In this document: positions 19,394-55,242 of the stretch, piece after piece
Layout of the letters: each line of letters opens with the position of its first letter
Position numbering within the stretch: the stretch's first letter is position 1
Virus record (IMG/VR): IMGVR_UViG_3300046616_000314
Coordinates: 434,001-498,000 of that record
Length of the DNA stretch: 64,000 bases
Reading direction: 5' to 3' (one strand)
The notes under the pieces: generated by a model
The model's database searches: none
What the model was told of the DNA's origin: nothing
The model's input: only the letters and a program-made list of their open reading frames with translations
Position numbers and translations under genes: made by a program

Positions 19394-20579
19394 GATCGTG
19401 CGCTTCTTTGGTTAGGTTGGGTAGTTGATTGCGATCACAGAATCGCATGAAGTGAATGCCGACGTTGCCGATGGCGCCTTTTTCAATCGCCGCCATGATC
19501 GTTTCATCCATCATGGTAATGACATCATCAGGTTGCTTGGACAGATCAATCAACAATTCATTGAATCGATATTGATCCAGCACCCGAACTTGTTCGGTAA
19601 TCGGCTGTCCATCGGGAGTTGTTTCGACCAGCTTTTCCCAACGTTGGAGCATGAAATTGTTCCAGTTGAAACCTTGCGTCTTGCGATCTTCCCAGGCTTC
19701 TTGGATGCCAACCTTGGACTTAGATGTCCAACGCACGCCAGGATACGCCGAGAAAATACCGTCGCCAGTATCACCACGGATGAGCTTGACGAACAGAGCT
19801 AGGCGCCACCATTCCGGTTCAGGGGTGAAATCGTACTCGACCCATTCGTAAGTAGACGGGACGAAAATTTGCGGAACGTACTCAGGATCATCATTCTTCT
19901 TGGACTTTTCCGAAGCTGCAAATGACACGCCACGGGCTTTTTCGGAGGCAATGTGAGCCTTCTCAAGTTCCTTTTGAGCCTTGTCGTGCTTCTTCTTCAT
20001 TTCCTCGATAGTGCCAGGAACTTTGATCTTGCCATCGCTAGGGTTCACGTGGAATTCCATCGGCGTACCCTTACCATCGAAGACACCATCTTGTGTCAGC
20101 AGGCGGTCATCAACGCCGTTGTAGATCGACACGTTAGGAGCGATCAGTTGAACGAAATCGCTATCGCCTGACAGGATGATATGGTCATCATCCTTATGGA
20201 CCTGAATCCATCGTGCAACGAAATCATCGCCTTCCACCTTCGGGTGGTGCAGGACGGTACAGCGGGTCTTGTCCTTGAGGAATTCGGTGAAGTCATTCAG
20301 CACCGAGAAGAAAGCTTCGTCTTCTTCTTTATCGGCGGTGCTCTTGGACATACGGTCCAGGCGACGCTTTCCCTTGTATTGTGGGAAGACATCGTATCGC
20401 CAGCTTTTGCCTTCAACGCAGAACACCATGTGATCGACTTGATAATCACGGTGTAGTTTGCGGAGGCTGCGGAATACGATATGGAGGGACATGCCTGCTT
20501 TCATGAAAGCATCACCACGAACGACGTGGCGAGCGCGGTGAAAGAGATTGGCAATGTCGATAATTGCGTAACGAGCCAT
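19362..20579 (-). CDS. rnh: T4-type RNase H / 5'-3' flap exonuclease
   Basis: IIDIANLF, SWRYDVFPQYKGKR, EGDD, ILSGDSDFVQL, IRGDTGDGI, NELLIDL. Confidence 0.9.
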   Translation of the reverse strand: MARYAIIDIANLFHRARHVVRGDAFMKAGMSLHIVFRSLRKLHRDYQVDHMVFCVEGKSWRYDVFPQYKGKRRLDRMSKSTADKEEDEAFFSVLNDFTEFLKDKTRCTVLHHPKVEGDDFVARWIQVHKDDDHIILSGDSDFVQLIAPNVSIYNGVDDRLLTQDGVFDGKGTPMEFHVNPSDGKIKVPGTIEEMKKKHDKAQKELEKAHIASEKARGVSFAASEKSKKNDDPEYVPQIFVPSTYEWVEYDFTPEPEWWRLALFVKLIRGDTGDGIFSAYPGVRWTSKSKVGIQEAWEDRKTQGFNWNNFMLQRWEKLVETTPDGQPITEQVRVLDQYRFNELLIDLSKQPDDVITMMDETIMAAIEKGAIGNVGIHFMRFCDRNQLPNLTKEAHDHAAYLKAPYR

Positions 20580-20640
20580 CTAAAAATCCTAAATCAATAA
20601 CTGATTTTAGAATCTTTAGATGGCATTTACCATAATTTTC

Positions 20641-21378
20641 TTACGAAAATTCGCTTGATCCGTCATCGTCGTTACGATGGATGCGGGTGATGCGAGCCGA
20701 GTTGAACGGCGTATTGTCTTGTTCAACCGGAGTCATTTCGGCTTGTGAGCGACACACGTCCGAGAACCATTGTTCCACGACTTGTTCGTCATCGTGACCC
20801 ATGTAACCGTTCTGGCGTAGGAAGCTGACCCATTGTTCATTCCAATCCAGTTCGAAGTATAGACCGTTGATGCCTTGCTTTTGGTCAAAGCCGTTGTCAA
20901 CTACACCTACCCACGGTTCGTTCTTCAGAGTAGCACATTCTTTTTCAAACTTTTGTTCGGTCAGATGTCCAAATTCGAGATCGACATCAAGCATGGCAAT
21001 TTTATGAGCCACGCTTTTTTCGTCAGGGAATTCATCTTTGACTTGAAGGCGAGCAAACGCTTCCGGTTCGATCTTACCGTGTTCGTTTTGGATGTTTGCA
21101 ATCAGCATAGCCGGAACGTCGTCCAGGGTTCCGTGATTGGCGATTGCGAGTTGGATTTCGTACTCATAAGGATCGGTGATCAAACCTTCCTTACGGTCGA
21201 TAGCGAGCAACTTGATCTTTTGCTCTTTTTCATCCTTCGCCGTGATCTTCACAAGCTCGCGCTCTAGATCGGCGCCATCATAGTAGTAGTTTGCTTCGGC
21301 GAGTCGCAAAGGATCGCCCGCAAGACCCCACGCAGCCGGGAGCCAGCTAAAGGGGATCAGTTTACGTTTTCTTGCCAT
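20641..21378 (-). CDS. Conserved phage hypothetical protein
   Basis: 245-aa ORF; C-terminal EPWVGVV...YFELDWN...GY...WF domain. Confidence 0.75.
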   Translation of the reverse strand: MARKRKLIPFSWLPAAWGLAGDPLRLAEANYYYDGADLERELVKITAKDEKEQKIKLLAIDRKEGLITDPYEYEIQLAIANHGTLDDVPAMLIANIQNEHGKIEPEAFARLQVKDEFPDEKSVAHKIAMLDVDLEFGHLTEQKFEKECATLKNEPWVGVVDNGFDQKQGINGLYFELDWNEQWVSFLRQNGYMGHDDEQVVEQWFSDVCRSQAEMTPVEQDNTPFNSARITRIHRNDDDGSSEFS

Positions 21379-21658
21379 GTTTTCCTTCTAACATTTTCAA
21401 TGAAAATAAAAATTCGTCCCACTGGTCTTTCAGCATGGGGCTTTCGTTGATAGCTTTCATAATAACAGCAAAGTCGTGACCAATGTTAATATGATAGAGT
21501 AGAGCCTTGACAATCGCATCCGCATGTTGCGTTGGTGTCTTCCCATCAGGGATTGACCGCATGTCTGGGATGTAAAAGCCGCGACTATTTAGAATACCGA
21601 TAAGATCAGTGACGATCTTAGTATTCAAAGACAGAGAATGTTTGGAGTAATCAGACAT
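21362..21658 (-). CDS. Hypothetical protein, LKDQW paralog family
   Basis: SPMLKDQWDEFLFSLKM. Confidence 0.75.
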   Translation of the reverse strand: MSDYSKHSLSLNTKIVTDLIGILNSRGFYIPDMRSIPDGKTPTQHADAIVKALLYHINIGHDFAVIMKAINESPMLKDQWDEFLFSLKMLEGKHGKKT

Positions 21659-22154
21659 TTTTACCCATCAACTTATCTTCTTTTAACTTGAGCATCATCA
21701 TGAAATCATCCCATTGTGCTTTAACAGTGGGGTCTTTTTGGACATATTCACGTAACTGACTGAACCGTTGTGATGCAAGCATGGTATCAACCAAGTAGAT
21801 CAACATTTTATTTTGCATTTCACCAGTCCACAATTCTGGTGGAGGGGTTGCACCCTTCGGTACCCATGCCGTCTGTGGTTTAAAATATCGTGTCAGTTCA
21901 TACAATTCGGGTTCCGTTACACTCAGATTACTCATATAGAACGGATTACCCTTGGTTCTTGATCGTTCGATTTCATGGAACAAATTTTCAAGAACAACGG
22001 CTCGGGCGGCAGCAATCTCGTACTGCTTAGTCATGTGTTTGAGTTGATGAGCATACCGTATTTTGTATTCTTCAATCGCTTCTTCGCGAATAATGGCGTC
22101 CCATTCGCGAAGTTGTTCCATGCGTTCTTCTACAGTTTGGGGCGCATTATCCAT
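21651..22154 (-). CDS. Hypothetical protein, LKDQW paralog family
   Basis: DPTVKAQWDDFMMMLKL. Confidence 0.75.
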   Translation of the reverse strand: MDNAPQTVEERMEQLREWDAIIREEAIEEYKIRYAHQLKHMTKQYEIAAARAVVLENLFHEIERSRTKGNPFYMSNLSVTEPELYELTRYFKPQTAWVPKGATPPPELWTGEMQNKMLIYLVDTMLASQRFSQLREYVQKDPTVKAQWDDFMMMLKLKEDKLMGKNV

Positions 22155-22626
22155 TTTTCATGGACTCCCGAAGGCGCATAGCAGCCATCATTTCTTCCCA
22201 TTGGTCTTTGAGCATTACGCTCTCTTCCATATGGCTTGCTAGGCGCAAGAAATGATCCCCGCGTTGAATTGCAGAAATCATTTCGTCTAACACCACTTGC
22301 TGAGTTTGAGCGCACCATTCACCCTTGAACCCAAACTTAAACGGCTCAAGCTCCGATGCAGTCAATTTTGCATTGATGCTTTTATATGTTTCGCTTGCTG
22401 AATCCGTGGAGCCATATACAGGTCTAGACCCAGACCGTATATACTCAAGTACACGTTCTATGACCAAAGCTTTGGGGGACACTTCATCAAGTCGCTTTTG
22501 AAGTAACTCTACACGTTCGTCCATTTTAGCTTCAAAATCGGCAATGGCTTCGGCGCGAATTTCTGCTTCCCAGAGACGCATCTTATCCATATGATCGATT
22601 TGTTCTTGGGTCAGATGATCAGACAT
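22147..22626 (-). CDS. Hypothetical protein, LKDQW paralog family
   Basis: SVMLKDQWEEMMAAMRL. Confidence 0.75.
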   Translation of the reverse strand: MSDHLTQEQIDHMDKMRLWEAEIRAEAIADFEAKMDERVELLQKRLDEVSPKALVIERVLEYIRSGSRPVYGSTDSASETYKSINAKLTASELEPFKFGFKGEWCAQTQQVVLDEMISAIQRGDHFLRLASHMEESVMLKDQWEEMMAAMRLRESMKNG

Positions 22627-23122
22627 TCTTTTCTGCCTCCAAAGCCAACATCATCATCATTTCTTCCCACTGATCTTTCAATCGCGGGTTAGCCTTGATG
22701 GATTGAATGAGTTGTTGGAAATCATACCCAATGACAACTTGTTTCATCATTGCCTGAAATGCGATATCAACTTTATCGTCCAAAGACTTCATGTAATCCG
22801 GGTTCTCGGAATCAAGAACCAGATGAGCAAGTTGAATGTCGGACGTGTCAACTCCGCGAACGTAGAATGCATGAACGAGTCTGCGATAAACCTTGCTTTC
22901 AAGAACCACGGCATGATAACGACTGCGCATAATAGAACGTTCGTTCTCCAAAGCCTCATTATATGCAGCAGACACCCGCGCTTCAACTTGGCGTTCGATT
23001 TCAAAAACGTCGTCGGATGTTAGAACTTTGGGCGCAGAATCCTTAAATTCTTTTATGAATTCGTGCGACAAATCCTTGAATTCTTGATCCAATTCGGCAT
23101 CTGATTTTGGTATATCTGACAT
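22619..23122 (-). CDS. Hypothetical protein, LKDQW paralog family
   Basis: NPRLKDQWEEMMMMLAL; upstream TAAATA at 23150-23145. Confidence 0.75.
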   Translation of the reverse strand: MSDIPKSDAELDQEFKDLSHEFIKEFKDSAPKVLTSDDVFEIERQVEARVSAAYNEALENERSIMRSRYHAVVLESKVYRRLVHAFYVRGVDTSDIQLAHLVLDSENPDYMKSLDDKVDIAFQAMMKQVVIGYDFQQLIQSIKANPRLKDQWEEMMMMLALEAEKNV

Positions 23123-23152
23123 ACAATTCCCTAAACTACGGATTTATTTAGT

Positions 23153-23180
23153 AAAAAGGGGAGAGCTTTCGCCCTCCCCC
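23153..23180 (-). terminator. Intrinsic terminator
   Basis: Minus strand GGGGAGGGC-GAAA-GCTCTCCCC followed by T5. Confidence 0.8.
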
Positions 23181-23288
23181 GAAAAACGCAGCGAGCCATC
23201 TGTGAGACTTCCCGCCACTTCCATTGCCCGCAAGTGATTTGGATCACCTCCCGATTCTGTAAGATTGGCAGGCAACAGCCCGTATTTC

Positions 23289-24020
23289 TTAGCGAGAAGC
23301 GCGGAGGAAATACGTGTAGTTACCGTGTGGGGTTTCTACGGAGACTGAGAAAACGCCACGACCGGTAATGCTGAACTTCACGGGATTAGACCCGCTCAGT
23401 TTAACGGCTGAAAGCAGATGTTGGACGTTGAACTTGACCGAACCACGGATATCACCCGTGACACCTGTTTCGAAAATCATGCTGGCACGGTGCGACGCAG
23501 AGTCGTCGTCACCGATGTAGAATTCCAGATTGCCATCTACGGTACGCACACCAAATTGGGGATCGATGTTGGCATACAGGTTCGCCAGTTGGGCAAACTC
23601 AGTCAGCTTCGACTTTGACGGTGTGAATTCAACATCCCAGGGGATGTTGGCGATGGTGGCTTGTTCAGGAGCAAGCTTGGGGTCCATCAGGCGAAACACG
23701 GCTTGGTTGCCTGTCACCTTGTTGCTGAATTCGAACTGATCGATGATCGAACGCTCGTCACGCTTCACGGTCTTAACGTTGAACGTGGCGTCATCGGTGC
23801 AGTAATTCGAGAAATTCAGCAAGCCATTCAGCAAGCTCATGTTAGCAATGGCAAACTCGCCATTGAATTCAGGGATTGCCTTCTTTAGACGGGCTTCAAT
23901 GAAGAATGCCTTATCCTTATCGCAAGCCTTGATAGTCGTCTCATCGGCGGAACCCAGGACGCGAAGCACGTCAACAAGTCCGCTTGTCTGCTTAAGCAGA
24001 TCGATCAATACATCACGCAT
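23289..24020 (-). CDS. Probable DNA polymerase sliding clamp (gp45-like)
   Basis: 243 aa with a beta-rich two-domain pattern, a clamp-like C-terminal YTYFL, and a position next to the DNA polymerase. The assignment rests on size, context and pattern. Confidence 0.6.
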   Translation of the reverse strand: MRDVLIDLLKQTSGLVDVLRVLGSADETTIKACDKDKAFFIEARLKKAIPEFNGEFAIANMSLLNGLLNFSNYCTDDATFNVKTVKRDERSIIDQFEFSNKVTGNQAVFRLMDPKLAPEQATIANIPWDVEFTPSKSKLTEFAQLANLYANIDPQFGVRTVDGNLEFYIGDDDSASHRASMIFETGVTGDIRGSVKFNVQHLLSAVKLSGSNPVKFSITGRGVFSVSVETPHGNYTYFLRASR

Positions 24021-24083
24021 TAATCTGTAACTCCAAATAATATCTAATTTTAACTATGTGAGGGTAGGAAAGCAATATTTTTG

Positions 24084-24467
24084 TTAAGTAGTTTTGAAAC
24101 GAAGAAAAAATTCCAGTAAGGCTTCTTCGTTAGAAAAAGCGAAAGTAATAGCTATAGTCTTGGAAGAAAAATCCATGACTGCACTTCTAACGCTCCATCT
24201 GGAATCAACACGATCACCCACCGAGATAGCATGTAAGACTGTATCAGCAGCGTCTTTGCCTGCTTTTACTGTGACCGTGTGTTGATGCTTACGAATAGTC
24301 TTGGAATAAGTTTTGAGGTAAGCATCAATATCTGTTTTGGTAGAGCCCTGAACTACGGGGAATTTACCGATGTAATCACCGTTACCGTTGGTGATCGGGC
24401 AAAACAAACCATAAGTTTCGGTAGAGGTATAAAGTGCTCCACCGACATGACATTCAACTGTTAACAT
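24084..24467 (-). CDS. Small hypothetical protein (FxDxxDAxxFKL family)
   Basis: C-terminal FAFSNEEALLEFFLRF. Confidence 0.7.
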   Translation of the reverse strand: MLTVECHVGGALYTSTETYGLFCPITNGNGDYIGKFPVVQGSTKTDIDAYLKTYSKTIRKHQHTVTVKAGKDAADTVLHAISVGDRVDSRWSVRSAVMDFSSKTIAITFAFSNEEALLEFFLRFKTT

Positions 24468-24470
24468 TCA

Positions 24471-27272: not shown

Positions 27273-27275
27273 AAT

Positions 27276-28717: not shown

Positions 28718-28778
28718 AGAAACCTCGTAAACTGGCTGTCAGATTAGCACAACCAATTTACGAGGGCAAAGACGAAAA

Positions 28779-31668: not shown

Positions 31669-31824
31669 AATACTTAACTCCTAATAGGATTATATTTACT
31701 ATAATATGCTCTACGACCACCTAAAGTCAAAATTAAATTAACTATATTCGTAAATTATATTAGGTACTTGCTTGACAGATTGAATTTTAGATGTATAGTG
31801 AAGTCATCATTTAAGGAGATTTTT

Positions 31825-31932
31825 ATGAGCCAATCAGCCCAGAATGCCGGTGTTGCCATTCTCTTCGTGATCATGATCGTCGCTGGTGCTGGTCAAATGG
31901 TGCTCAACATCATGACCCTGTGTGGCAAGTAA
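31825..31932 (+). CDS. 35-aa single-TM peptide (not in the ORF track)
   Basis: TTGACA-N16-TATAGT, then AAGGAG RBS, then MSQSAQNAGVAILFVIMIVAGAGQMVLNIMTLCGK. Confidence 0.7.
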   Translation: MSQSAQNAGVAILFVIMIVAGAGQMVLNIMTLCGK

Positions 31933-35498: not shown

Positions 35499-37826
35499 TT
35501 ATTCAGCAATTTCGGCGACTACCGCGACTTCAGGCGGCTTGGTAGCCGCGATAGGGGTCACGACGATCTTGTCTTCGACCACTCGCACCATGGCGATGCC
35601 GCCGTACGGAGTCAGTTCGCCGATCAGCATCATCTTGGAAAGCGGCTTCTTGATCGTTTCCTTGATCAGACGGTTCAACGGGCGGGCGCCCATCGCACGG
35701 TCGTAGCCGTTCTTGGCGAGCCACTGAACAGCAGCTTCATCAAGGTCCAGGGTGACGTTGCGTTCCTTCGCCATGTCTTCCAACTGACCGATGAACTTAT
35801 GGACAATCTTTTCCATATTTTCAGGAGCCAGGAAGTTGAACATGACCGTGGCGTCGAGGCGGTTGCGGAATTCGGGGCTGAAACGCTTCTCGATAGCCTT
35901 TTCCGCATCCTGCGTTTGTTGCTGACCACCGAAGCCCAGAGGGTTCTTAGCCAGCATTTCCGCGCCCGCGTTCGAAGTCAGGATCAGAATAATATTCTGG
36001 AACGAGACCGTCTTACCCGTCGAGTTGGACAGGCGACCATCGTCCATGACTTGAAGCAGGATGTTTTGAATGTCGGCGTGAGCCTTTTCAAATTCGTCCA
36101 GCAGGACCACGGCGCGCGGGTGATTATCCACTTCGTTGACCAGCTTGCCACCAGCCGCGCCACCTTCGCCGTGACCGACGTAGCCAGGAGGCGAGCCTAT
36201 CAGCTTAGCGACCGAATGCTTTTCCATGTATTCCGACATATCGTACTTGAGCATCGGAACGCCCAGCGTGTCAGCCAGGGCACGAGCGGTTTCGGTCTTA
36301 CCCGAACCGGTCGGACCAGCGAAGAGGTAGCAACCCGCCGTCTTGTTGGCTTCGCGCAGACCGGCACGGGCAATGTAAACGTCGGTTTCCAGGGCTTCGA
36401 TGGCTTGATCTTGACCGAAGACGCGAGCCCGAAGGTTCTTTTCCAAGTCCTTCAGGTTGTCTTGTTCATCACCCGAGACCTGTTGAGCCGGAATGTTGGC
36501 GACTTCGGAAATCTCGTACTCGATTTGCGCAACATCGATGATCTTGATGCGCTCGGCTTCCGGGGTGATACGCTGACGGGCGCCCGCGCCGTCGATCAGA
36601 TCAATCGACTTGTCGGGGTTCTTTTGACCGGTGATGTAGCGAGTCGAGAGATCAACCGCCGCATCAAGGGCTTCGTCGGTGTACGTAACTTCGTGGAACT
36701 TTTCGAAGGTTTCACGCAGACCGCGCAGGATCAGCTTGGTTTCCGCGATGGTCGGCTCATCAGCCGTGACCTTCTGGAAACGACGACGAAGGGCGGCGTC
36801 CTTGTCGAAATGCTTCTGATATTCGTCCAGGGTGGTCGAACCGATGCAACGCAGCGTGCCGCGAGCCAGGGCGGGCTTCAGCAGGTTCGCAACGTCCATG
36901 GTACCTTGGCTCGATGCCCCGGCGCCCATGATGTTGTGAATTTCGTCCACGAACAGAATGGAGCCTTCCACCATTTCCAGGGACTTGATGACTTGCTTCA
37001 TACGTTCTTCGAAATCACCACGGTACTTTGTACCGGCGATCAGATCAGCGATTTCGAGCGAATAGACCGTCGAAGCCTTCAGATTGTCGGGGACTTCGCC
37101 CTTGACGATCTTATATGCCAGACCTTCGGCGATGGCAGTCTTACCCACGCCAGCGTCACCGACGATCAGCGGGTTGTTCTTGCGGCGACGCGAAATGATT
37201 TGTTGGATGCGCAGTAGTTCGACCGAACGACCAATCAGCGGATCGATGCGACCAGCGACAGCTTCGGCGTTCAAATCCTTGGTGTACTTCTTCAGGATTT
37301 CCTTGGCGTCTTCCAAGGTCAGAACTTCCTTGGATTGCTGGATCGGCTCGCCATCGGGACCGACTTCACCATTGGGGCTCAGAATGCGGGCGATCTTGAG
37401 TTGAACGTCGGCGCCGCCGAACTTCTTGAGGACAGCGATAGCGTGGCTGTCGTCGTCATCGTGGCTGACCAGATGATAGAGAATGTGACCAGCCGTGGTG
37501 GCATTGGGCTGACCCTCGCGTTGCGAGAACATCGCGTGCGACACGGCGCGGGCGATAATGTGGTTGAAACCTTCCGAGGCGACCGGGCGACCACCCGAGA
37601 CCGGAATGATGCCGCTTTTTAGAATGCTTTCCAGAATCGGCGTCAGGTTGGTATCCGCCGGGGTCAGCACCTTGGACAAAATGTCCTGAACTTGCGGTTC
37701 TGCCAGGAGAGCCAGCAGAAGGTGTTCGGGAGTCACGTACTCATGGCGGTGCTTGACGGCAATGGCTTCGGCGCGGTGAATGTTCGCCAAAATTTCTTGA
37801 TGTTGGGGAGGCTGATTTTTAGACAT
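35499..37826 (-). CDS. clpA: ATP-dependent Clp protease ATPase subunit, ClpA-like
   Basis: [62 protein letters not shown] ClpP-docking loop; no ClpB middle domain. Confidence 0.93.
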
Positions 37827-38332: not shown

Positions 38333-38829
38333 TATCGCATACCATTCGCGTAGGTTTGGTTGACCATGGCGATACCACGGTCACGAAGGGCGTTGCACTG
38401 TGACACATTGCCCATGCTGATGTTCGCCTGCAAACTGCGACGAATATAATAGGTGTCGTTGAAGATCGCGTTGCGGATGTTTTGAGCTTCTTCGAAAGTC
38501 AGGACACCGCCCGAAGTGCGTTCATTCTTGGTGACACGGCGTGCCGCAGTACCGATGGCTTCACCCAGAGCATCTTCAGCGTGAATGCAGGCGATGATAT
38601 CTTGTTGGCTGACCGGGCGACGTTCCGAAATCGGACCCAGCGGGCGATTTTGATTTTCGTAGTCGATCTGGCGACGAGCGTGGTTGCATTGAATAGTGAC
38701 GCAACGACCAGCATCAATGGCATCGCCGAGAGATTCCGCGTCACTGATCCGCACCTGACCATGGGCTCGACCAGCGTTGGCGAGACCGATGAGGGCGATG
38801 AGAATCAGGACCGGAGCGGCAATACGCAT
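38332..38829 (-). CDS. Exported hypothetical protein
   Basis: Signal peptide ending AHG; four cysteines. Confidence 0.7.
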   Translation of the reverse strand: MRIAAPVLILIALIGLANAGRAHGQVRISDAESLGDAIDAGRCVTIQCNHARRQIDYENQNRPLGPISERRPVSQQDIIACIHAEDALGEAIGTAARRVTKNERTSGGVLTFEEAQNIRNAIFNDTYYIRRSLQANISMGNVSQCNALRDRGIAMVNQTYANGMR

Positions 38830-38885
38830 TAAAACCTCGTGAAAAATTTATCGTATGATCAAATTTAACACGAAATTCTCGTTTG

Positions 38886-39716
38886 TCAAGAGTTGGGAGG
38901 GTTTTTAAATGAACGAAGTATCGTTTTTTGTTCTTCTGATACATTATTAGGCAAAATAATGTTAACAACGATATGTAATGGACCAAAGATGTCAGTACGT
39001 CCCAAGGCAGGCATACCTTTACCATCAATAGTAATCATTGTTCCAGTTTGAACATCCGCCGGTAATTTGTACTGAATGTTTTCTCCACTCAGGGTGCGAA
39101 CCCAAAATGTGTCATTGATCATCGCGTCAACCGCATCAATGTCAGCACGGGTAAACAACTCGGTTCCCTGACGTTGGAACATACCATGTTCAGCAACGTG
39201 GATGATGACATACAAGTCGCCGGGAGGTAGTGACTTGTCGGCATCATCACCTAGACCCGTCATTTTCAATCGGGCTCCTGATTCAATACCGCGAGGAATG
39301 TTGAATTTGATTTCCCGATTCGCGGGAGCCCCTAGATTCATGGAAACCTCACCACCTTCAAACGCTTGTAAGAGCGTGACTTGATAATGAGTGGTGTAAT
39401 CCCGATTGGTGGGCTTAGGGGGCGGTCCAGGGTGTTGTTGATGCCAGAAATTCCGAAGGATGTCTTCAAAACTCGGGTTGTTCATATCAAAATGGAACTG
39501 GCGATTTCCACCCGATGATTGTTGGCGAAGACTATCGCGCGAAGCTTGATCTTTGATTTGATTATAAGCGTGCGTGACTTCTTCAAATTTTGCGCGAGCT
39601 TCATCAGTATTGTTAAGATCAGGATGATACTTCTTAGCCAAACCACGATAAGCGGTCTTGATAACATCATCGTTCGCATCTTGGGGAACGCCCAAGACGG
39701 CATAAGGATTGGTCAT
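38886..39716 (-). CDS. DnaJ/CbpA-type co-chaperone without zinc finger
   Basis: J domain with HPD; C-terminal GDLYV and GKGMP. Confidence 0.93.
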   Translation of the reverse strand: MTNPYAVLGVPQDANDDVIKTAYRGLAKKYHPDLNNTDEARAKFEEVTHAYNQIKDQASRDSLRQQSSGGNRQFHFDMNNPSFEDILRNFWHQQHPGPPPKPTNRDYTTHYQVTLLQAFEGGEVSMNLGAPANREIKFNIPRGIESGARLKMTGLGDDADKSLPPGDLYVIIHVAEHGMFQRQGTELFTRADIDAVDAMINDTFWVRTLSGENIQYKLPADVQTGTMITIDGKGMPALGRTDIFGPLHIVVNIILPNNVSEEQKTILRSFKNPPNS

Positions 39717-40518: not shown

Positions 40519-40591
40519 ACTCGTATTTAGCGTTGACAAATCTCTATTCTAGGATAGTATGAAGTCATTGATTTGATAGAGGATTGCTAAA

Positions 40592-41080
40592 ATGATTGGT
40601 TTCATCATCGGCGGCGTGTTCTTTAGCATTCTGTTTTTTGTGTTCCGCAAGGCGATCTTCTGGTTTCTGATCATCACAGTTGTCCTCACGGCAATCGCCA
40701 TGATGTTCAACTCGACGCTCGGCGGCGCCCAGAAAAATCAACCTCTCGATAAAGTTATTTCGACGCTGCACCCCACGGAACACACGGATAAATCCCTGTC
40801 GGCTATCCTTACGGTCACGAATAACTCGAATTATTCGGTCAAGACGATTAACGTTCGCTGCACAGGCACGACCTTCGGCGGTGAAAATGTCTCGGAAATC
40901 ATGCTTCTTCCTATCTCGTTCGAAGTGGCTCCGCACGAAATCAAGAGCACGACTTTGAGCGGTGCTATCTTGACGAGCCAAAGCGTGTGCGAGACTACGG
41001 CGTTTGCAAGCTGGAATCGCAACAAGAAAGACGCTGGTAGTTATATCGATGATATGACTGCATGGATGAATGCACACTAA
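40592..41080 (+). CDS. Hypothetical membrane protein
   Basis: Two N-terminal TM segments and a beta-rich domain; promoter-like TTGACA at 40533. Confidence 0.7.
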   Translation: MIGFIIGGVFFSILFFVFRKAIFWFLIITVVLTAIAMMFNSTLGGAQKNQPLDKVISTLHPTEHTDKSLSAILTVTNNSNYSVKTINVRCTGTTFGGENVSEIMLLPISFEVAPHEIKSTTLSGAILTSQSVCETTAFASWNRNKKDAGSYIDDMTAWMNAH

Positions 41081-48182: not shown

Positions 48183-48191
48183 AGGATTACA

Positions 48192-50272: not shown

Positions 50273-53122
50273 ATGGCTAATATCAAGAACTTCGGTATGA
50301 TTGGTGTTGGCTCGGACGTTCAGTTTGGTAAGGGCGGCGTAAAGCTCGTCTCGACCAACGGAACATTCGCTGCCAAGGACGCACAAGGTAATGCCTTTGT
50401 TCGTTTCCAAATCGCCGATGGTAACAGCGCATCCGACGCCGTTACATATTCGCAGTTGCAAGCGACTGCGAACGCCGTTGCTGATAGCGTAGCAAACGCT
50501 GTCGATGGCGTTCAAAATGAACTGGACCTGACTCAAGCGGGTGCTGGTCTGGATACCGATGGTTCGTATATCGCCCCAGTCGGTTCGTTCTATCTGAACA
50601 ACACCACAAGCCTCGCCAACGCAATTTTCGCGTTGGACACTCAAGCATTCAACGAAGCCAACGCCCGCGCGACTGCGGACGCTGAATTCGCTAACGCCCT
50701 GGCTGATGCGACCGCGAACGCGCTGTCGTTGCAAGCTGAAATCGACCAAATCGAAACTTCGGTTGGTCTGGGTCTTGATGGCACTCTGACTCTGGCTGCT
50801 GGCAACTATCTCGCCAACGCAGTTGATATCGTCAACGCAATCGAAACTTTGGATGGCGTTCTGGGTAACACCGCCACTGAAGCCGCTGCTGCCAACGCAA
50901 CTGCTACCGCTGCTAACGCCGCTGTCTCCGCTGTCGTTTCTGATCTGGCTAACACCAATGCAGAAGTTGCATCGGTTAATGCTACTGTTGAAGCTCTTTC
51001 GACCACTGTTACTGCTATTGCTGACAGCCTTGACGCTCTGAGCGACAACGTTGCAACCAACACTGCTGACATCGCAACCAACGCTGCTTCGATTGCAAAC
51101 ACCAATGCCGACGTTGCTAATACCAACGCTGACGTTGCTGCCCTGACCGCAAACGCTGTCCTGAAGGACGGTTCGGTTGCTTTCACTGGCGCAATGAGCA
51201 TGGGCAACAACGTCATTCACGACGTTGCTACTCCGGTTCTGGGTACTGATGCCGCTAACCGCGACTTCGTTATGCAAACAGTTGGCGAACTGGGTAACGC
51301 ATTCAACTACGTTGGATCGCTACCTGAACTGTTCGGTACCTTCCCGGTTTCGGGCGATGGTTTGACCGCTAACACCGCGTTCGATCTGGGTGAATTCCCG
51401 CCGGAAGGTCAAAATGCCGGTGACTACTATAAGGTTACTGCTGAAGGTTTCTATAAGGTCGGCGCCAATACTGCTGTCCTGTTTGAACCGAACGATGGTC
51501 TCGTATTCAACGCCATCGGTGATATCGATAAGATCGACAACCAATCGTCGGTCGTTCTGGGTACTCCTGGCGAAATCGACGTTACTGGTAGCGCATCGAC
51601 CGGCTTCACCGTTGGTATCGATGATAGCTATACACTAGCTCGCCAACAAGAAGTTTCGGATTCGGCTAACGTTGCTGCTACTGCTACTGCTGCGGTTGCT
51701 TCTGATCTGGCTAACACCAATGCCGACGTTGCTGCTGTTGTTTCCGATCTGGCAAACACCAACGCTGACGTTGCTGCGGTTGCTGCTGATCTGGTAAGCA
51801 CTAATGCAAACGTTGTCACTCTGACAGGTGTTGTTTCCGGTAACTCGGCAAACATCGCTCTGCTGCAAGGCGACATCGCTAACGCTGCTGGTGATTTGGC
51901 TGCTGAAACTGCTGCCCGTATCCAAGGCGACAGCGACAACGCTAACGCGATTGCTTCGACCAACGCCAACGTCACTTCGCTGGCTGGTAACGTTGCTACG
52001 ATCAGCAACAACGTTGATGCATTGATTCTTGAACTCAATACCGTCGAAACCGGCGCCGGTCTGGAAACAGACGGTTCGTATTCGGCTAATGCACTGTCGC
52101 ACTATCTGGCTAACGCTACAAGCCTGAAGACTGCTGACGAAGCTCTGGATACTGCGATCTATGATCTGGCTCAATCGCTGACCACTCTTTCGCAAGACGA
52201 AATCAAGACTGAAGACAACCTCAACTCGGTTAAGGTCGAAGCTGACAAAATCGGTTTCAATCTGAACGTTGGTGGTGTTAAGACTGAAGTTGGTTCGATC
52301 CTCGCTGATGCAAACACCAACACAACCGCTACCCTCGATCTGACCACTGCTGGTGAAGTTCACCTTGCGGCTGGCGGTGCAAGCACAGACGTTGATCTGC
52401 GCCTGTCGGGTAAGGGTGCTGGTCAAGTCATCATCGGTGAAACCGGAACTGGTTTCATTCAAGCTGACGCTGGTTATGACCTGAACGTTGCTGGTGGTGA
52501 TGGTGCTGCGCTGAACCTGATGGGTACAGCGGTCAACATTTCCTCGGGTGAAGGCGATGCGATCATGTCGTTCGTTGGCGTTGCCAACGCAACTGCTTCG
52601 TTCGTTGCCACAAACGGTACAACTGACGTTACTTTCGCCGCTACTGGCGCGGGTGCAAACATCGATATCGTTCTGGACCCGAAGGGTACAGGTACTATCA
52701 ATGCTTCGTCGTCGCGCATCGTCTCGGTTGCTAACGCTGTTAGCGCAAACGACGCTGTTAACAAGGGTCAACTGGATACCGCGATTGCTACCGCAACCGT
52801 TGGTGTTGTTAAGACCGTTGTTCTGTCGATTGTTGAAGTCGATGGTACATACGACATCGGTCAAATTGCCGGTACTGTTCTGCAAACTCGTACTTTGGTC
52901 ACAGGTGGCTTCGGTCCCGGTGCTGCCATCGTCATCGGTTCGACAGCTACTCCGAACGAACTAGCGTCGGCTGCTGATATTGATGAATCTGCTGCTGGCA
53001 TCTACGTTGTAGAAACAGTTAAGGACTACGGTTCGCCGACAATGCTGACTGTTACCGTCACTGGCTCTGCCATTGCCGGAACCGGCGCCGCGAAGGTAAT
53101 CGTTGAATATCTGTCTGCGTAA
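50273..53122 (+). CDS. Long coiled-coil fibre protein (module A, ANTNADVA heptads)
   Basis: Ala/Asn-rich heptads; DAVTYSQL, DAANRDFV and DAVNKGQL neck motifs; strong RBS, TAAATA and terminator. Confidence 0.85.
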   Translation: MANIKNFGMIGVGSDVQFGKGGVKLVSTNGTFAAKDAQGNAFVRFQIADGNSASDAVTYSQLQATANAVADSVANAVDGVQNELDLTQAGAGLDTDGSYIAPVGSFYLNNTTSLANAIFALDTQAFNEANARATADAEFANALADATANALSLQAEIDQIETSVGLGLDGTLTLAAGNYLANAVDIVNAIETLDGVLGNTATEAAAANATATAANAAVSAVVSDLANTNAEVASVNATVEALSTTVTAIADSLDALSDNVATNTADIATNAASIANTNADVANTNADVAALTANAVLKDGSVAFTGAMSMGNNVIHDVATPVLGTDAANRDFVMQTVGELGNAFNYVGSLPELFGTFPVSGDGLTANTAFDLGEFPPEGQNAGDYYKVTAEGFYKVGANTAVLFEPNDGLVFNAIGDIDKIDNQSSVVLGTPGEIDVTGSASTGFTVGIDDSYTLARQQEVSDSANVAATATAAVASDLANTNADVAAVVSDLANTNADVAAVAADLVSTNANVVTLTGVVSGNSANIALLQGDIANAAGDLAAETAARIQGDSDNANAIASTNANVTSLAGNVATISNNVDALILELNTVETGAGLETDGSYSANALSHYLANATSLKTADEALDTAIYDLAQSLTTLSQDEIKTEDNLNSVKVEADKIGFNLNVGGVKTEVGSILADANTNTTATLDLTTAGEVHLAAGGASTDVDLRLSGKGAGQVIIGETGTGFIQADAGYDLNVAGGDGAALNLMGTAVNISSGEGDAIMSFVGVANATASFVATNGTTDVTFAATGAGANIDIVLDPKGTGTINASSSRIVSVANAVSANDAVNKGQLDTAIATATVGVVKTVVLSIVEVDGTYDIGQIAGTVLQTRTLVTGGFGPGAAIVIGSTATPNELASAADIDESAAGIYVVETVKDYGSPTMLTVTVTGSAIAGTGAAKVIVEYLSA

Positions 53123-53143
53123 TTCTAGATAACTCAGACAACA

Positions 53144-53176
53144 GGGAAGGCGGGGGAAACCCCGCCTTTTCTATTT
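53144..53176 (+). terminator. Intrinsic terminator
   Basis: AAGGCGGGG-GAAA-CCCCGCCTTTT. Confidence 0.85.
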
Positions 53177-53210
53177 CATAAATAAATGTATCCAATGGAA
53201 TAAATGTCTC

Positions 53211-53840
53211 ATGTCTACACCCTCAAACATTCAATTTTATGTAAAATTAATTGTCTCCAAGGAACTAGATAAAAGTTCTGCGAAAGAGTGGTTTGCGTGC
53301 GTTCGTGATTTGGGTCCTAATGGTGTTTTGTCCACCATTCAAACTCCTGATGACAAGGGAACGCTACGTAGTGTGTCCATGGTATGTCGTGCAGTTGGTG
53401 AAAAATTCGAATATATTGTTCCGTTGACACGCGATCTGATCGAACGAGAAGTTGAACCCATCATTCAATGTTTTGTCGCGGAACACCCCGAAGTCGATTT
53501 CGATGTTGAAACCTCGGTGGCAGTCATTCGCGGCTTCGAAGATTCCGCAAAAATTAAAGATTCAAAATACGTTGAGCTTTGCACCTTGTGGGCTAAGCAG
53601 CGTCACGACGAATGGTATAAAGATCGCACCGACAATGGTTGGTCGTATGGTACCTCGGTTAGCCTGAAAGATAAGAAGCATCCCTTGCTTCGTCCCTGGC
53701 ATGAACTTTCTGATCAGCATCGCAAGATCGATCTGGACCAACCGAAGCAGATGATGAAGATGCTAGCCGATAGCGGTTACGCCGTTCTCGACAAGGACGA
53801 ATTTGATAGCATGGTCCGACTTCTTAAGGGTGGATTGTAA
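53211..53840 (+). CDS. RyR-domain protein
   Basis: AKQRHDEW...GWSYG......KKHPLLRPWHELS...RKID is the ryanodine-receptor repeat signature. Confidence 0.85.
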   Translation: MSTPSNIQFYVKLIVSKELDKSSAKEWFACVRDLGPNGVLSTIQTPDDKGTLRSVSMVCRAVGEKFEYIVPLTRDLIEREVEPIIQCFVAEHPEVDFDVETSVAVIRGFEDSAKIKDSKYVELCTLWAKQRHDEWYKDRTDNGWSYGTSVSLKDKKHPLLRPWHELSDQHRKIDLDQPKQMMKMLADSGYAVLDKDEFDSMVRLLKGGL

Positions 53841-53883
53841 TAAAATATTGAAATGGGGTTAACGTAACCGGTATAATCTGGTT

Positions 53884-55242
53884 ATGAATTCTGTTTCAAT
53901 TATCAAAGACCTTTCCGCTACCACGTCGCGCATCGACAAAGAGCAAATCCTAATCAATGCCTTCATGACAGGGCAACGAGAATTTTTTAAGGGCGCCCAA
54001 CTCGCCTATGATCCGCTCATCACTTTCGGTGTTAAGAAAGTAGCGTTGATCGAAGAAGCCGATGACGAACCCGGTGATTATACGTTCGCAGACTTTCTTG
54101 CCCTCGCGAACGATCTACGCACTCGGAAGCTAACCGGACATGCCGCCCGTGATGCTATCAACGCCGCTGCAATGCGTTGCCATGTCGAAACATGGAATAT
54201 GTTCTATCGCCGTATTCTTCTAAAAGATTTCAAGGCTGGTGTTGAACAGTCCACCATCAATAAAATTTTAAAGAAGCTGGCATCGGAAGATGACGCTAAG
54301 GATTTCATCGTTCCTGAATTTTCGTGCCAACTAGCCGAAGATGGAATGAAGCCAGTTCACCACAAGAAGGTGAGCGGTCGCAAGATGCTAGACATCAAGT
54401 TGGATGGTATGCGTCTTCTTACGGTTTTGGACAAAGAACAAGGTACCGTAAACCAGTACACGCGCACGGGTAAGCTCAACGAAAACTTCAGTGAGATTCG
54501 TGAAGGTTTGTTGAAACTTCTACCTGAACTTAAGACATCGTTGGTGCTCGACGGCGAAGTGATTTCAACAAGCTTCCAAGATTTGATGACACAGGTCAAC
54601 CGCCGTGAAGGTGTTGACACGAAAGCTGCGCGCCTAGCACTTTTTGACATCATTCCTCTTGATGCATTTCGTGCCGGAAAATGGAATGTAGAACAAGTTC
54701 TTCGCCAAGAAATTCTTGCCGAAATGGAAACGAGTGGGCTTTTCAAGAAGTATTGTAACGGATTGGTCTACGTAATTCCCAAAGTAACGGTGGACCTAGA
54801 TACGGACGCTGGACAAGAAACCTTCAAGGAATTCAACAAACAAGCAATCGAGTCTGACTATGAAGGTATCATGGTCAAGGACCCGAAGGCTCCATATATT
54901 TGTAAGCGTAACGTCGGATGGCTTAAGATCAAGCCCTTCATCGAAGTTAGCCTTGAGGTAATTGGTATTGAAGAGGGTGAACCCGATGGAAAGTATAAGG
55001 GCAAGCTTGGTGCGCTGAAGTGTCAGGGCGAAGACGACGGGAAAGAGATTGAGGTTTTCGTTGGTAGTGGTATAAGTGATATTCAACGTGACCTATGGTG
55101 GAAAAATCCTGCCTTGGTTATGGGTATGATTGTTGAAGTCCGCGCCGATTGCTTTACCTTAGAGGCAGGCGGCACGGTATATTCCTTGCGGTTCCCTCGT
55201 TTGAAGGGCTTCCGTGGCACGGTTCCAGGCGAGAAATTATGA
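53884..55242 (+). CDS. ATP-dependent DNA ligase
   Basis: KLDGMR, VLDGE, LFDII, EGIMVK, WLKIK, SLRFPR. Confidence 0.96.
   Translation: MNSVSIIKDLSATTSRIDKEQILINAFMTGQREFFKGAQLAYDPLITFGVKKVALIEEADDEPGDYTFADFLALANDLRTRKLTGHAARDAINAAAMRCHVETWNMFYRRILLKDFKAGVEQSTINKILKKLASEDDAKDFIVPEFSCQLAEDGMKPVHHKKVSGRKMLDIKLDGMRLLTVLDKEQGTVNQYTRTGKLNENFSEIREGLLKLLPELKTSLVLDGEVISTSFQDLMTQVNRREGVDTKAARLALFDIIPLDAFRAGKWNVEQVLRQEILAEMETSGLFKKYCNGLVYVIPKVTVDLDTDAGQETFKEFNKQAIESDYEGIMVKDPKAPYICKRNVGWLKIKPFIEVSLEVIGIEEGEPDGKYKGKLGALKCQGEDDGKEIEVFVGSGISDIQRDLWWKNPALVMGMIVEVRADCFTLEAGGTVYSLRFPRLKGFRGTVPGEKL

What the first reader, a model, noticed from the sequence alone, without database searches (positions are those of the whole stretch)
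20575..53884. Recurring switch: promoter embedded in a hairpin whose 3' arm masks the RBS or start codon
Seen at six sites. (i) 28723-28765 minus: a 17-bp stem with 2 G-U pairs on the mRNA strand, the -10 TAATCT in the loop, -35 TTGCCC at the 5' base, and the 3' arm covering GAGG. (ii) 20575-20624 minus: a ~22-bp stem burying AGGA and the rnh ATG; no clear promoter found here. (iii) 38837-38873 minus, downstream of TTGACA. (iv) 40539-40585 plus: the spacer AATCTCTAT pairs with the RBS region ATAGAGGATT. (v) 53865-53884: TAACCGG-TATAAT-CTGGTTA, with the -10 as the loop and the ligase ATG at the base. (vi) around 31787-31814. Established: T4 genes e, soc, 49 and I-TevI use this geometry with late promoters, so only the proximal transcript is translated. 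Inference: here it is used repeatedly with sigma70-like promoters, which would silence these genes on read-through transcripts.
Basis: partly seen in the sequence, partly recalled or inferred. Interest (0 to 1): 0.6.

Follow-up and report, generated by a model that had tools for sequence, protein, structure and literature searches.

The report
Promoters built into translation-masking RNA hairpins
In this 561-kb T4-related jumbo phage, about one promoter in six lies inside an RNA hairpin that buries the next gene's ribosome-binding site or start codon, so the gene should be translated only from its own promoter; this is a known T4 late-gene trick, here extended to early promoters and leaderless genes.

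Summary
The window is part of a 561,116-bp IMG/VR jumbo phage whose PolB is 52-54% identical to Sinorhizobium phage Phosso and Agrobacterium phage Atu_ph07.

Four of the six sites are real hairpins:
- (i) dG -26.6, z -7.2
- (ii) dG -26.3, z -7.9
- (iii) dG -16.3, z -4.1
- (v) dG -22.7, z -6.2; this is really a 23-bp stem at 53847-53900.

Sites (iv) and (vi) fold no better than shuffled sequence.

The promoter evidence does not line up with the hairpin evidence. Strong sigma70-like promoters sit at iii, iv and vi. Site v has a plausible one that would give a leaderless mRNA. Site i has only an extended -10, and ii has none by my matrix.

- 13 of 76 predicted early promoters, against 0-3 in re-pairing permutations, carry upstream sequence that masks the TIR by at least 8 kcal/mol. 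For late promoters it is 11 of 67 against 1-5.
- These hairpins occur almost only behind a co-directional gene (12/47 against 1/29).
- They favour the mRNA strand.
- They recur upstream of rnh and ligase in distant relatives, with different sequences and some compensatory changes.

No TSS or translation data could be obtained. I read this as a new variant of the T4 e/soc/49/I-TevI mechanism.

The parts
28723..28765 (-). Site (i): 17-18 bp hairpin between thyX (stop 28779) and a 118-aa ORF (ATG 28717). The 3' arm pairs GAGG (28726-28723). The loop holds TGcTAATCT (TG at 28749-28748, TAATCT at 28746-28741), an extended -10-like element.
   Evidence: dG -26.6, z -7.15. Antisense folds at only -18.4. 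TIR opening energy 19.0 kcal/mol. Promoter PWM score 5.3. The proximal transcript from about 28734 is unstructured.
20575..20624 (-). Site (ii): about 22-bp hairpin between a 245-aa virion-structural-like gene (stop 20641) and the rnh/5'-3' exonuclease gene (ATG 20579). AGGA (20590-20587) and the ATG are paired. TAAAAT (20609-20604) lies at the end of the 5' arm. The position matching the -35 of relatives reads TGGTAA.
   Evidence: dG -26.3, z -7.86. Opening energy 25.1. PWM score -1.4. Relatives keep TTGACA plus a hairpin at the same place. Pfam 5_3_exonuc_N.
38831..38889 (-). Site (iii): early promoter TTGACA (38889-38884), N16, TAAATT (38867-38862). Its spacer forms the 5' arm of a hairpin (38879-38831) that pairs GAGG ahead of the ATG at 38829.
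   Evidence: PWM 19.2; dG -16.3, z -4.09; opening energy 11.4 in the long transcript against 3.7 from the TSS; permutation percentile 0.018.
53847..53900 (+). Site (v): 23-bp hairpin containing a whole promoter, TTGAAA (53848-53853), N18, TATAAT (53872-53877), 6 nt, then the ligase ATG (53884). There is no SD, so the proximal mRNA would be leaderless. The 3' arm is the ATG plus 17 nt of ORF.
   Evidence: dG -22.7, z -6.18. Antisense folds at -6.2. PWM 8.1, one of 13 early-type promoters ending 4-6 nt before an ATG. Ligase N-terminus confirmed by homologues of the same length. Relatives L002/L003/L004 keep the -10 at N6-7 before the ATG plus a bridging stem.
40533..40596 (+). Site (iv): a real early promoter (TTGACA 40533-40538, N16, TAGTAT 40555-40560) but no significant hairpin and no masking.
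   Evidence: PWM 19.5; z +0.34; mask gain -1.4, rank 70 of 76.
31772..31830 (+). Site (vi): a real early promoter (TTGACA 31772-31777, N16, TATAGT 31794-31799) ahead of a 35-codon ORF (ATG 31826), but no significant hairpin.
   Evidence: PWM 18.8; dG -4.4, z +1.12.
16534..16598 (+). It ends 1 nt before the start of an 84-aa ORF (16600-16854) that has a hydrophobic stretch suggesting a membrane segment (by eye, not tested). This is the textbook T4 gene-e geometry.
   Evidence: dG -33.0; opening energy 18.3.
55668..55732 (+). A further early promoter (TTGACT, N16, TATCCT) whose upstream part pairs with the TIR of the gene starting at 55733.
   Evidence: dG -20.3; mask gain 7.7, permutation percentile 0.018.
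53143..53172 (+). Canonical intrinsic terminator (13-bp stem closed by a GC-rich core, then a T-run), followed at once by a late promoter (predicted TSS near 53190) for the RyR-domain gene 53211-53840. That gene reads into site (v). It shows what real terminators look like in this phage.
   Evidence: (dG -24.6).
23157..23180 (-). Canonical terminator followed by a late promoter (predicted TSS near 23140). That promoter heads the tightly packed gene run 23122-20641, which ends at site (ii).

Best explanation
These are cis-acting mRNA hairpins at junctions between co-directional genes. The RNA copy of the downstream gene's own promoter region (spacer, -10 and discriminator) pairs with that gene's Shine-Dalgarno sequence and/or start codon.

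A transcript that reads through from the upstream gene contains both arms. Its TIR then costs 15-25 kcal/mol to open, so the gene stays untranslated. A transcript that starts at the embedded promoter begins at or near the apical loop and lacks the 5' arm. Its TIR is open (about 5 kcal/mol), or in the leaderless variant such as the ligase it begins at the AUG itself.

Translation of each such gene is thereby tied to the activity of its own promoter and insulated from upstream transcription. This lets early and late genes be interleaved on one strand without terminators.

Shown here: the hairpins, their excess, their placement relative to promoter motifs, gene orientation and strand, and their conservation. 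Inferred: the TSS positions, the existence of read-through, and the effect on translation.
For: (1) TIR opening energy of at least 15 kcal/mol is found in 52 of 866 genes, against 11 and 11 in two dinucleotide shuffles.

(2) The masked TIRs are concentrated at tandem junctions with 40-90-nt gaps: 24/111, against 12/402 for gaps under 40 nt and 3/148 for divergent junctions.

(3) For 76 early promoters, real upstream/downstream pairs bridge the TSS with mean ddG -7.96, against -4.5 to -5.0 in 12 re-pairings. Mask gain of at least 8 kcal/mol occurs 13 times against 0-3. Opening energy is 9.8 in the long transcript against 5.4 in the proximal one. Late promoters give 11 against 1-5.

(4) Hairpin loops sit at the predicted TSS.

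(5) Masking needs a co-directional upstream gene: 12/47 against 1/29, p=0.0012.

(6) The sense strand folds better than the antisense at 82 of 110 tandem junctions, p=8e-11, with selection symmetric between strands.

(7) Proximal transcripts of i, ii, iii and v are unstructured, z +0.2 to +1.6.

(8) Upstream of rnh, 17 of 75 relatives have a masked TIR beaten by 0 of 20 shuffles. The sequences are unrelated between subclades, a TTGACA promoter spacer typically forms the 5' arm, and there are compensatory changes. Ligase shows the same.

(9) The same excess appears at 49 other promoters in related phage loci: 12 against 1-4.

(10) The mechanism is experimentally established for T4 e, soc, 49 and I-TevI (PMC3014915).
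Against:
- Sites i and ii, the strongest hairpins, have weak (5.3) or no (-1.4) early-promoter score. If they truly lack promoters, the genes would be permanently masked unless something opens the stem.
- In a roughly 60-nt gap any 45-nt hairpin must overlap both the promoter and the TIR, so the geometry is partly forced by compaction.
- About 4 of the top 15 are terminator-like (T5-6 after the stem).
- Masked early genes are no more often downstream of late promoters than unmasked ones (6 late/7 early against 31/30), so a simple early-versus-late rationale is not demonstrated.
- Gene calls, start codons and TSSs are my own predictions.
Confidence: 0.58

Rival explanations
1. The hairpins are 3'-end structures of the upstream gene (intrinsic terminators or 3' stabilisers). 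They overlap the next promoter and TIR only because the genome is compact, and TIR masking is a by-product.
For: They occur only behind co-directional genes. A subset has a GC-rich stem followed by T5-6 and then C/A-ATG, for example at genome positions 57181, 231317, 17691 and 239433. A weak terminator-like stem also sits at the thyX end just before site i.
Against: Sites i, ii, iii and v and about 11 of the top 15 have no U-tract, and their 3' arms run into the SD, the ATG or the coding sequence. The phage's clear terminators look different: GC-rich with a T-run, at 53143-53172 and 23180-23157. Hairpins are more frequent where an early promoter is present than at promoter-less junctions (p=0.009). 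In relatives the conserved feature is anti-SD/SD pairing.
Confidence: 0.15
2. The long stems (17-28 bp) are host RNase III processing sites. Cleavage would separate the cistrons and could even unmask the downstream TIR on read-through transcripts.
For: Stem lengths at ii, v, 16534-16598 and genome 527012 reach the roughly 20 bp typical of RNase III substrates. This would explain how i and ii could be expressed without their own promoter.
Against: No phage RNase III gene was found (PF14622). Many members of the class, and the conserved rnh stems in relatives, are only 8-12 bp. This reading does not explain the association with promoters.
Confidence: 0.08
3. Translational coupling: a ribosome terminating at the upstream stop codon melts the stem and licenses initiation downstream.
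For: The hairpins start 6-16 nt after the upstream stop at v, i and ii. The start codon pairs with the base of the 5' arm, which is the part nearest the stop.
Against: The bases that pair with the TIR begin 14-26 nt after the stop codon in 9 of 12 short junctions. That is beyond the reach of a terminating ribosome. Several masked sites have gaps of 245-1020 nt.
Confidence: 0.06
4. Gene-specific RNA operators for protein repressors (as for T4 gp43 or gp32), or DNA-level palindromes bound by regulators at promoters.
For: The rnh hairpin is conserved across a wide clade. A CGAAAAT/ATTTTCG motif, sometimes palindromic, accompanies early promoters.
Against: Every hairpin has a different sequence, so there is no shared operator. 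G-U pairs and a strong sense-strand bias argue for RNA rather than DNA. No Rfam family matches.
Confidence: 0.05

Closest known systems
T4 genes e, soc, 49 and I-TevI: a late promoter inside an RBS-sequestering hairpin (Uzan & Miller 2010, PMC3014915, section 29)
   Same: The SD and/or AUG lies in a helix on long transcripts. A promoter in the DNA that encodes the 5' strand or loop yields short transcripts that lack the 5' arm. The window holds one textbook case at 16534-16598, with ATAAATA in the loop.
   Different: The device is used at roughly 24 promoters genome-wide rather than a handful. Some cases are leaderless. The masked genes are replication, repair and translation enzymes (rnh, DNA ligase, RNA ligases, an aaRS) rather than lysis or endonuclease genes.
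RBS-sequestering hairpin of the homing endonuclease gene mobE in Aeromonas phage Aeh1 (cited as refs 105-106 in PMC3014915)
   Same: A hairpin masks the RBS of a gene embedded in a co-directional transcription unit of a T4-related phage.
   Different: That is a single mobile gene. Here it is a genome-wide architecture at core genes. I read only the citation, not the paper.
Lambda cI: leaderless from PRM, leadered from PRE (from my own knowledge, not checked here)
   Same: Promoter choice decides whether the mRNA starts at the AUG. This is relevant to site v and to the 13 early and about 40 late promoters that end 4-6 nt before an ATG.
   Different: In lambda both transcripts are translated. 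Here the internal AUG on read-through RNA has no SD and is additionally buried in a 23-bp stem.
Intrinsic (Rho-independent) terminators overlapping the next gene's start
   Same: A minority of the hairpins (GC-rich stem plus T5-6, then ATG) fit this, and may do both jobs.
   Different: Sites i, ii, iii and v have no U-tract.
Hairpin-controlled RBS access in RNA phages (for example the Q-beta coat RBS, PMC2978339)
   Same: Stem stability at the SD sets initiation.
   Different: There the stem is opened by ribosome traffic or long-range folding. Here relief comes from starting transcription inside the structure.

Membership tests
T4-type promoter-in-hairpin translational masking (e, soc, 49, I-TevI) | SD and/or AUG sequestered in an RNA helix on the longer transcript | tested here: met
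   Met in silico for i, ii, iii and v (opening energies 19.0, 25.1, 11.4 and 16.4). Not met for iv and vi (z +0.34 and +1.12).
T4-type promoter-in-hairpin translational masking (e, soc, 49, I-TevI) | A promoter lies within the DNA encoding the 5' strand or loop, so proximal transcripts lack the 5' arm | tested here: inconclusive
   Met by motif prediction for iii (PWM 19.2), for v (8.1, leaderless class) and for 13 early plus 11 late sites elsewhere. Site i has only an extended -10 (5.3) and ii scores -1.4. No TSS data.
T4-type promoter-in-hairpin translational masking (e, soc, 49, I-TevI) | The embedded promoter is a late, gp55-type promoter (TATAAATA) | tested here: not met
   None of the six sites has the phage's late motif [AC]TAAATA in the stem or loop. 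It is met at 16534-16598 and at other late promoters. The motif is validated by 70 of 86 ATAAATA copies lying upstream of genes, and by its presence 15 nt before the Gp23 capsid gene.
T4-type promoter-in-hairpin translational masking (e, soc, 49, I-TevI) | Co-directional upstream transcription reads through into the gene | tested here: inconclusive
   Gene order fits: 12/47 tandem against 1/29 divergent promoters are masked. There is no terminator between the upstream late promoters and sites ii, iii and v. The RNA itself was not observed.
T4-type promoter-in-hairpin translational masking (e, soc, 49, I-TevI) | Long transcripts are poorly translated and short ones well translated | not testable with these tools
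   This needs reporters, toeprinting or ribosome profiling.
Intrinsic terminator | GC-rich stem followed directly by a U-tract | tested here: not met
   The tails after the stems of i, ii and v are not T-runs, and one search lists no terminator at i or ii. The feature is met at a minority of other masked junctions.
RNase III processing site | About 20 bp or more of near-continuous dsRNA, with cleavage by RNase III | tested here: inconclusive
   The length criterion is reached by ii and v and nearly by i. No phage RNase III was found. Cleavage cannot be tested.
Leaderless mRNA (site v) | No SD, and transcription starts at the A of the start codon | tested here: inconclusive
   No SD upstream of 53884. 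The -10 TATAAT ends 6 nt before the ATG, the same spacing as in 12 other early-type promoters. Late motifs peak sharply 4-5 nt before the ATG (37 genes). The TSS is unmapped.
Any curated RNA family (Rfam 15) | Covariance-model match at gathering score | tested here: not met
   The only hit in the window is a tRNA at 9225-9298.

The most novel reading that the evidence does not exclude
Translation in this clade of jumbo T4-related phages is licensed by promoter of origin as a general design rule. Roughly one promoter in six, early and late alike, is embedded in a TIR-masking hairpin, and about 50 further genes are leaderless. Read-through RNA is therefore largely untranslatable, and temporal classes can be interleaved on one strand without terminators. 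The rnh and ligase masks are ancient, being maintained by compensatory evolution across phages that share only 36-70% protein identity.
Probability: 0.35. Interest if true: 0.7.

Novelty: new variant of a known kind. Interest (0 to 1): 0.58.

Why it matters
If confirmed, a regulatory device known from four T4 late or mobile genes becomes a genome-wide insulation system in giant phages. It would work with host-type early promoters and with leaderless starts.

It would change how transcriptomes of such phages are read, because RNA coverage would not equal expression. It would help explain how a 561-kb genome packs hundreds of independently timed genes with few terminators. It also offers compact, portable promoter-plus-mask modules for synthetic biology.

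Cultured relatives exist (Phosso on Sinorhizobium meliloti, Atu_ph07 on Agrobacterium tumefaciens), so the idea is directly testable.

Tried and rejected
- Megablast and blastn of the window against the phage collection found no near relative.
- The search for related loci with the single ligase protein found nothing. Alignment-based scans worked.
- The genome search by 'relatives' and by locus handles is not available for this virus record or for the metagenome loci.
No reads were laid, so there is no RNA evidence. I did not try to get around this.
- RNALfold energies alone did not discriminate: structures of -20 kcal/mol are common in 48% GC coding sequence. A metagene plot of hairpins of 10 bp or more showed no peak at starts. 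I replaced it with TIR opening energies and re-pairing permutations.
- The generic sigma70 scan is at chance level in this region, 15 hits against 15.5 expected. I therefore used a genome-specific matrix.
- Site i cannot be compared by synteny, because the 118-aa gene is absent from the three closest relatives' neighbourhoods and has no PHROG match.
- A direct alignment of the rnh leader with the closest relatives is not alignable. Each sequence folds on its own.
- E. coli jumbo phage E9.1 and the RB49-like phage kvi show no clear rnh mask.
- I tested whether masked early genes lie preferentially downstream of late promoters. They do not.
- The first sense/antisense comparison on the top 20 was biased by selecting on the sense strand. 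I redid it with symmetric selection.
- The Miller 2003 T4 genome review is not held. No paper was found on promoters of Atu_ph07-like phages or on leaderless late genes in T4-like phages.

Full report
**Context**

The window is bases 434001-498000 of a single 561,116-bp contig with 48% GC and 36 tRNA genes. It is an IMG/VR virus record rated 97% complete.

Its family-B DNA polymerase is 52-54% identical to those of Sinorhizobium phage Phosso and Agrobacterium phage Atu_ph07. It also has a T4 Gp23-type capsid gene, a 5'-3' exonuclease related to T4 rnh, an ATP-dependent ligase, ThyX and a ClpB-like ATPase. It is therefore a T4-related jumbo phage known only from a metagenome.

No annotation was available, so I called 867 genes with a hexamer model and refined the starts. 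Every gene start, promoter and TSS below is a prediction.

**The six sites**

| Site | Coordinates | dG (kcal/mol) | z | Shuffles as good | Early-promoter score |
|---|---|---|---|---|---|
| i | 28765-28723 (-) | -26.6 | -7.15 | 0/200 | 5.3 |
| ii | 20624-20575 (-) | -26.3 | -7.86 | 0/200 | -1.4 |
| iii | 38879-38831 (-) | -16.3 | -4.09 | 1/200 | 19.2 |
| iv | 40534-40596 (+) | -8.7 | +0.34 | 119/200 | 19.5 |
| v | 53847-53900 (+) | -22.7 | -6.18 | 0/200 | 8.1 |
| vi | 31773-31830 (+) | -4.4 | +1.12 | 179/200 | 18.8 |

The folding figures come and the promoter scores.

- Sites i, ii, iii and v are far more stable than shuffled sequence. Sites iv and vi are chance pairings.
It is a 23-bp stem that contains the ATG and 17 nt of the ligase ORF.
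- In i, ii and iii the 3' arm covers the SD (GAGG or AGGA), and in ii it also covers the ATG.

*How the promoters were scored.* I first learned the phage's own signals.

- K-mer enrichment upstream of genes gives two motifs. One is GCTTGACAA. The other is [AC]TAAATA, for which 70 of 86 ATAAATA copies lie within 100 nt upstream of a gene.
- [AC]TAAATA precedes the capsid gene by 15 nt, so I take it to be the late promoter.
- TTGACA-N16-18-TAnnnT is 91% intergenic (62 of 68 perfect copies) and ends 21-38 nt before start codons. I take it to be the early, host-sigma70-type promoter. It has a preferred 16-nt spacer and a TG extended -10.
- The scoring matrix built from these sites has a training median of 18.2 and a 5th percentile of 9. 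Random 75-nt windows have a 99th percentile of 8.8.

*What the scores mean.*

- Site v reads TTGAAA-N18-TATAAT and ends 6 nt before the ATG.
- Site i has a poor -35, but TGcTAATCT is a good extended -10.
- So iii and v have both a hairpin and a promoter. Sites i and ii have a hairpin only, and iv and vi have a promoter only.
- Transcripts started at the predicted TSSs of i, ii, iii and v are unstructured, with z from +0.2 to +1.6.

**Is the architecture recurrent beyond chance?**

*Masked TIRs.* I computed the free energy needed to open positions -15 to +5 of every gene, folded in a -70 to +35 context.

- 52 of 866 genes need at least 15 kcal/mol, against 11 and 11 in two dinucleotide shuffles.
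- Listing them shows one repeated layout. A gap of about 55-70 nt after a co-directional gene holds an early promoter, and the promoter's spacer or -10 region forms the 5' arm.
- Strongly masked TIRs are concentrated in tandem junctions with 40-90-nt gaps:

| Junction type | Masked (opening energy at least 15 kcal/mol) |
|---|---|
| Tandem, gap 40-90 nt | 24/111 |
| Tandem, gap under 40 nt | 12/402 |
| Divergent | 3/148 |

*Re-pairing test.* For 76 early promoter-gene pairs I split the sequence at the predicted TSS. I compared each real upstream/downstream pair with 12 permutations that re-pair upstream parts with other genes' downstream parts. This keeps promoter and TIR composition but breaks any specific complementarity.

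| Measure | Real | Permuted |
|---|---|---|
| Mean bridging ddG (kcal/mol) | -7.96 | -4.5 to -5.0 |
| Pairs with ddG of -10 or lower | 16 | 1-6 |
| Mean TIR opening energy, long transcript | 9.8 | 6.7-7.5 |
| Mean TIR opening energy, proximal transcript | 5.4 | same |
| Mask gain of at least 8 kcal/mol | 13 | 0-3 |

- Late promoters with a leader (n=67) behave alike: 11 against 1-5.
- In the strong cases the apical loop coincides with the predicted TSS.
- Site iii ranks 17th (gain 7.7, percentile 0.018). Site iv ranks 70th (gain -1.4).

**Tests that separate explanations**

- *Orientation.* Masking at early promoters occurs at 12 of 47 promoters behind a co-directional gene and at 1 of 29 divergent promoters (p=0.0012). 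This is expected if the partner is read-through RNA.
- *Strand.* With selection symmetric between strands, the sense strand folds better at 82 of 110 tandem junctions (p=8e-11), and at 34 against 8 among the most structured. This argues for an RNA-level rather than a DNA-level function. The sense strand is slightly G+T-rich (0.529), which accounts for part of the effect.
- *Terminators.* About 4 of the top 15 have a GC stem, then T5-6, then ATG, and may double as terminators. The rest, including i, ii, iii and v, have no U-tract.
- *Ribosome coupling.* The bases that pair with the TIR start 14-26 nt after the upstream stop codon in 9 of 12 short junctions, which is too far for a terminating ribosome to reach.
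- *RNase III.* No phage gene was found. Host RNase III cannot be excluded for the longest stems.
- *Known RNA families.* No Rfam family matches.
- *Temporal logic.* In the window, sites i, ii, iii and v all lie downstream of late promoters on the same strand with no canonical terminator in between (one search lists only a weak terminator-like stem at the thyX end before site i). Site ii directly follows a gene matching a PHROG annotated as virion structural protein. Genome-wide, however, masked early genes are no more often preceded by late promoters than unmasked ones. The early-versus-late rationale is therefore plausible locally but not demonstrated.

**Comparative evidence**

The phage belongs to a large, mostly uncultured clade with contigs of 400-640 kb.

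*rnh.*

- Three close relatives (66-67% protein identity) keep a 55-60-nt gap with TTTTGACA at the position where our phage reads TGGTAA. In each, an anti-SD (CCTCCG-like) in the promoter spacer pairs with the SD. The sequences are unrelated to our AT-rich stem.
- Among 75 IMG/VR relatives, 17 have a masked rnh TIR that none of 20 shuffles matches, where about 4 would be expected.
- These fall in several subclades at only 36-40% identity. Some have perfect TTGACA-N17-TATTAT promoters whose spacer pairs with the SD.
- One subclade of seven sequences gives a 16-bp consensus helix in which three pairs change on both sides and many change in G-U-compatible ways.
- Phosso shows a weaker version, TTGACT-N18-TAAAAT. 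An E. coli jumbo phage and an RB49-like phage show none.

*Ligase.*

- Relatives L002/L003 and L004 keep a TAnnnT element 6-7 nt before an SD-less ATG, plus stems that bridge the TSS.
- More distant relatives have TTGACA promoters whose spacers pair with the ligase SD.

*Other promoters.* Pooling 49 other perfect-(-35) promoters from the fetched loci reproduces the excess, 12 against 1-4 with ddG of -10 or lower. Two of the top five turned out to be rnh sites that my filter missed.

**Interpretation**

The best reading is the one established for T4 genes e, soc, 49 and I-TevI, where long transcripts sequester the TIR and transcripts from a promoter inside the structure do not. In T4 gene e this gives a 100-fold effect (PMC3014915).

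Three things are new here. The embedded promoter is early-type. The device is used at about 24 promoters genome-wide. There is also a leaderless variant: 13 early-type promoters end 4-6 nt before an ATG, and the late motif peaks sharply 4-5 nt before the ATG of 37 genes.

A leaderless gene is switched by its promoter even without a hairpin, because an internal AUG with no SD is not an initiation site. The ligase adds a 23-bp stem on top of that.

Annotated masked genes are rnh, DNA ligase, one clear RNA ligase and one weak RNA-ligase-like hit, a class II aminoacyl-tRNA synthetase, an RlaP nucleotidyltransferase and a weak PTH2-like hit.

For sites i and ii the promoter is the weak link. By positional homology ii sits where relatives have a promoter, and i has an extended -10. 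If these are inactive, RNase III or another opener would be needed.

**Limits**

- Everything rests on predicted genes, motifs, TSS offsets and nearest-neighbour folding.
- Permutation numbers are small (8-12), although the separations are large.
- In a 60-nt gap the overlap of hairpin, promoter and TIR is partly forced. The evidence therefore lies in the excess of hairpins, their dependence on orientation and strand, and their conservation, not in the geometry alone.
- No RNA data could be obtained.

Noticed in passing
Genome-wide. In the window: motifs at 30387-30381(-) with ATG 30375; 40530-40524(-) with ATG 40518; 56989-56983(-) with ATG 56977; 59167-59161(-) with ATG 59155.: The late-promoter motif [AC]TAAATA ends exactly 4-5 nt before the ATG of 37 genes, with no SD. 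This implies leaderless late mRNAs. A second group of genes has the motif 23-33 nt upstream with an SD. I found no paper describing this for T4-like phages.
   Followed up: partly
Genome-wide (13 genes). In the window: 53848-53886(+).: Thirteen early-type promoters (TTGACA-like, N16-18, TAnnnT) end 4-6 nt before an ATG, most often 6 nt. This suggests leaderless early mRNAs too. In several of them (genome 287375, 379332, 11700) the promoter region, in two cases the spacer, is complementary to the ATG region or the first codons.
   Followed up: partly
window 16534-16854 (+): A 28-bp hairpin (dG -33) has the late motif in its loop, directly before an 84-aa ORF with a hydrophobic stretch that suggests a membrane segment. 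I did not test that. The geometry is that of T4 lysozyme gene e, and a lysis-related role is only a guess.
   Followed up: partly
Genome-wide. Examples: window 20652-20644(-) and 28779-28771(-); genome 328137 (palindrome).: The motif ATTTTCG/CGAAAAT is enriched in intergenic DNA (66 of 209 copies). It often abuts the -35 of early promoters (ATTTTCGTTGACA, TTGACGAAAAT) and is sometimes part of a palindrome between divergent promoters. It could be an UP-like element or a regulator site. In relatives AATTTTCGTAAA precedes the rnh promoter.
   Followed up: partly
Genome-wide, for example genome 154228, 118230, 116429 and 10032 (-): Many leaderless late genes begin ATGCGCG... directly after ATAAATA-N4. 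This looks like a multi-copy gene family that shares promoter and N-terminus.
   Followed up: no
window 35499-37826 (-): A 775-aa ClpB/ClpA-like double AAA+ chaperone lies in a locally GC-rich stretch (55.6% against 48%). It may have been acquired from a host.
   Followed up: no
genome 264204-265469 (+), 165112-166299 (+), 187545-188441 (-): The phage encodes a class II aminoacyl-tRNA synthetase, an RNA ligase and an RlaP-type nucleotidyltransferase, besides 36 tRNAs. All three genes have masked TIRs.
   Followed up: partly
all 867 called genes: More than half of the called genes (489 of 867) have no SD match of 4 nt or more. Upstream regions are AT-rich instead, which fits heavy use of leaderless or SD-independent initiation. 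Some of this may reflect errors in my start calls.
   Followed up: no
relatives L086-L088 (downstream of rnh) and L088:48-281: Relatives carry PAS-domain and HWE/HisKA_2 histidine-kinase-like genes near rnh. One carries a protein with an Acb2/Tad1-hairpin domain, which is an anti-CBASS/Thoeris sponge family.
   Followed up: no
window 9225-9298 (+): A tRNA gene (Rfam). It corresponds to the tRNA-Arg(tct) that ARAGORN finds at genome 443225-443301.
   Followed up: no
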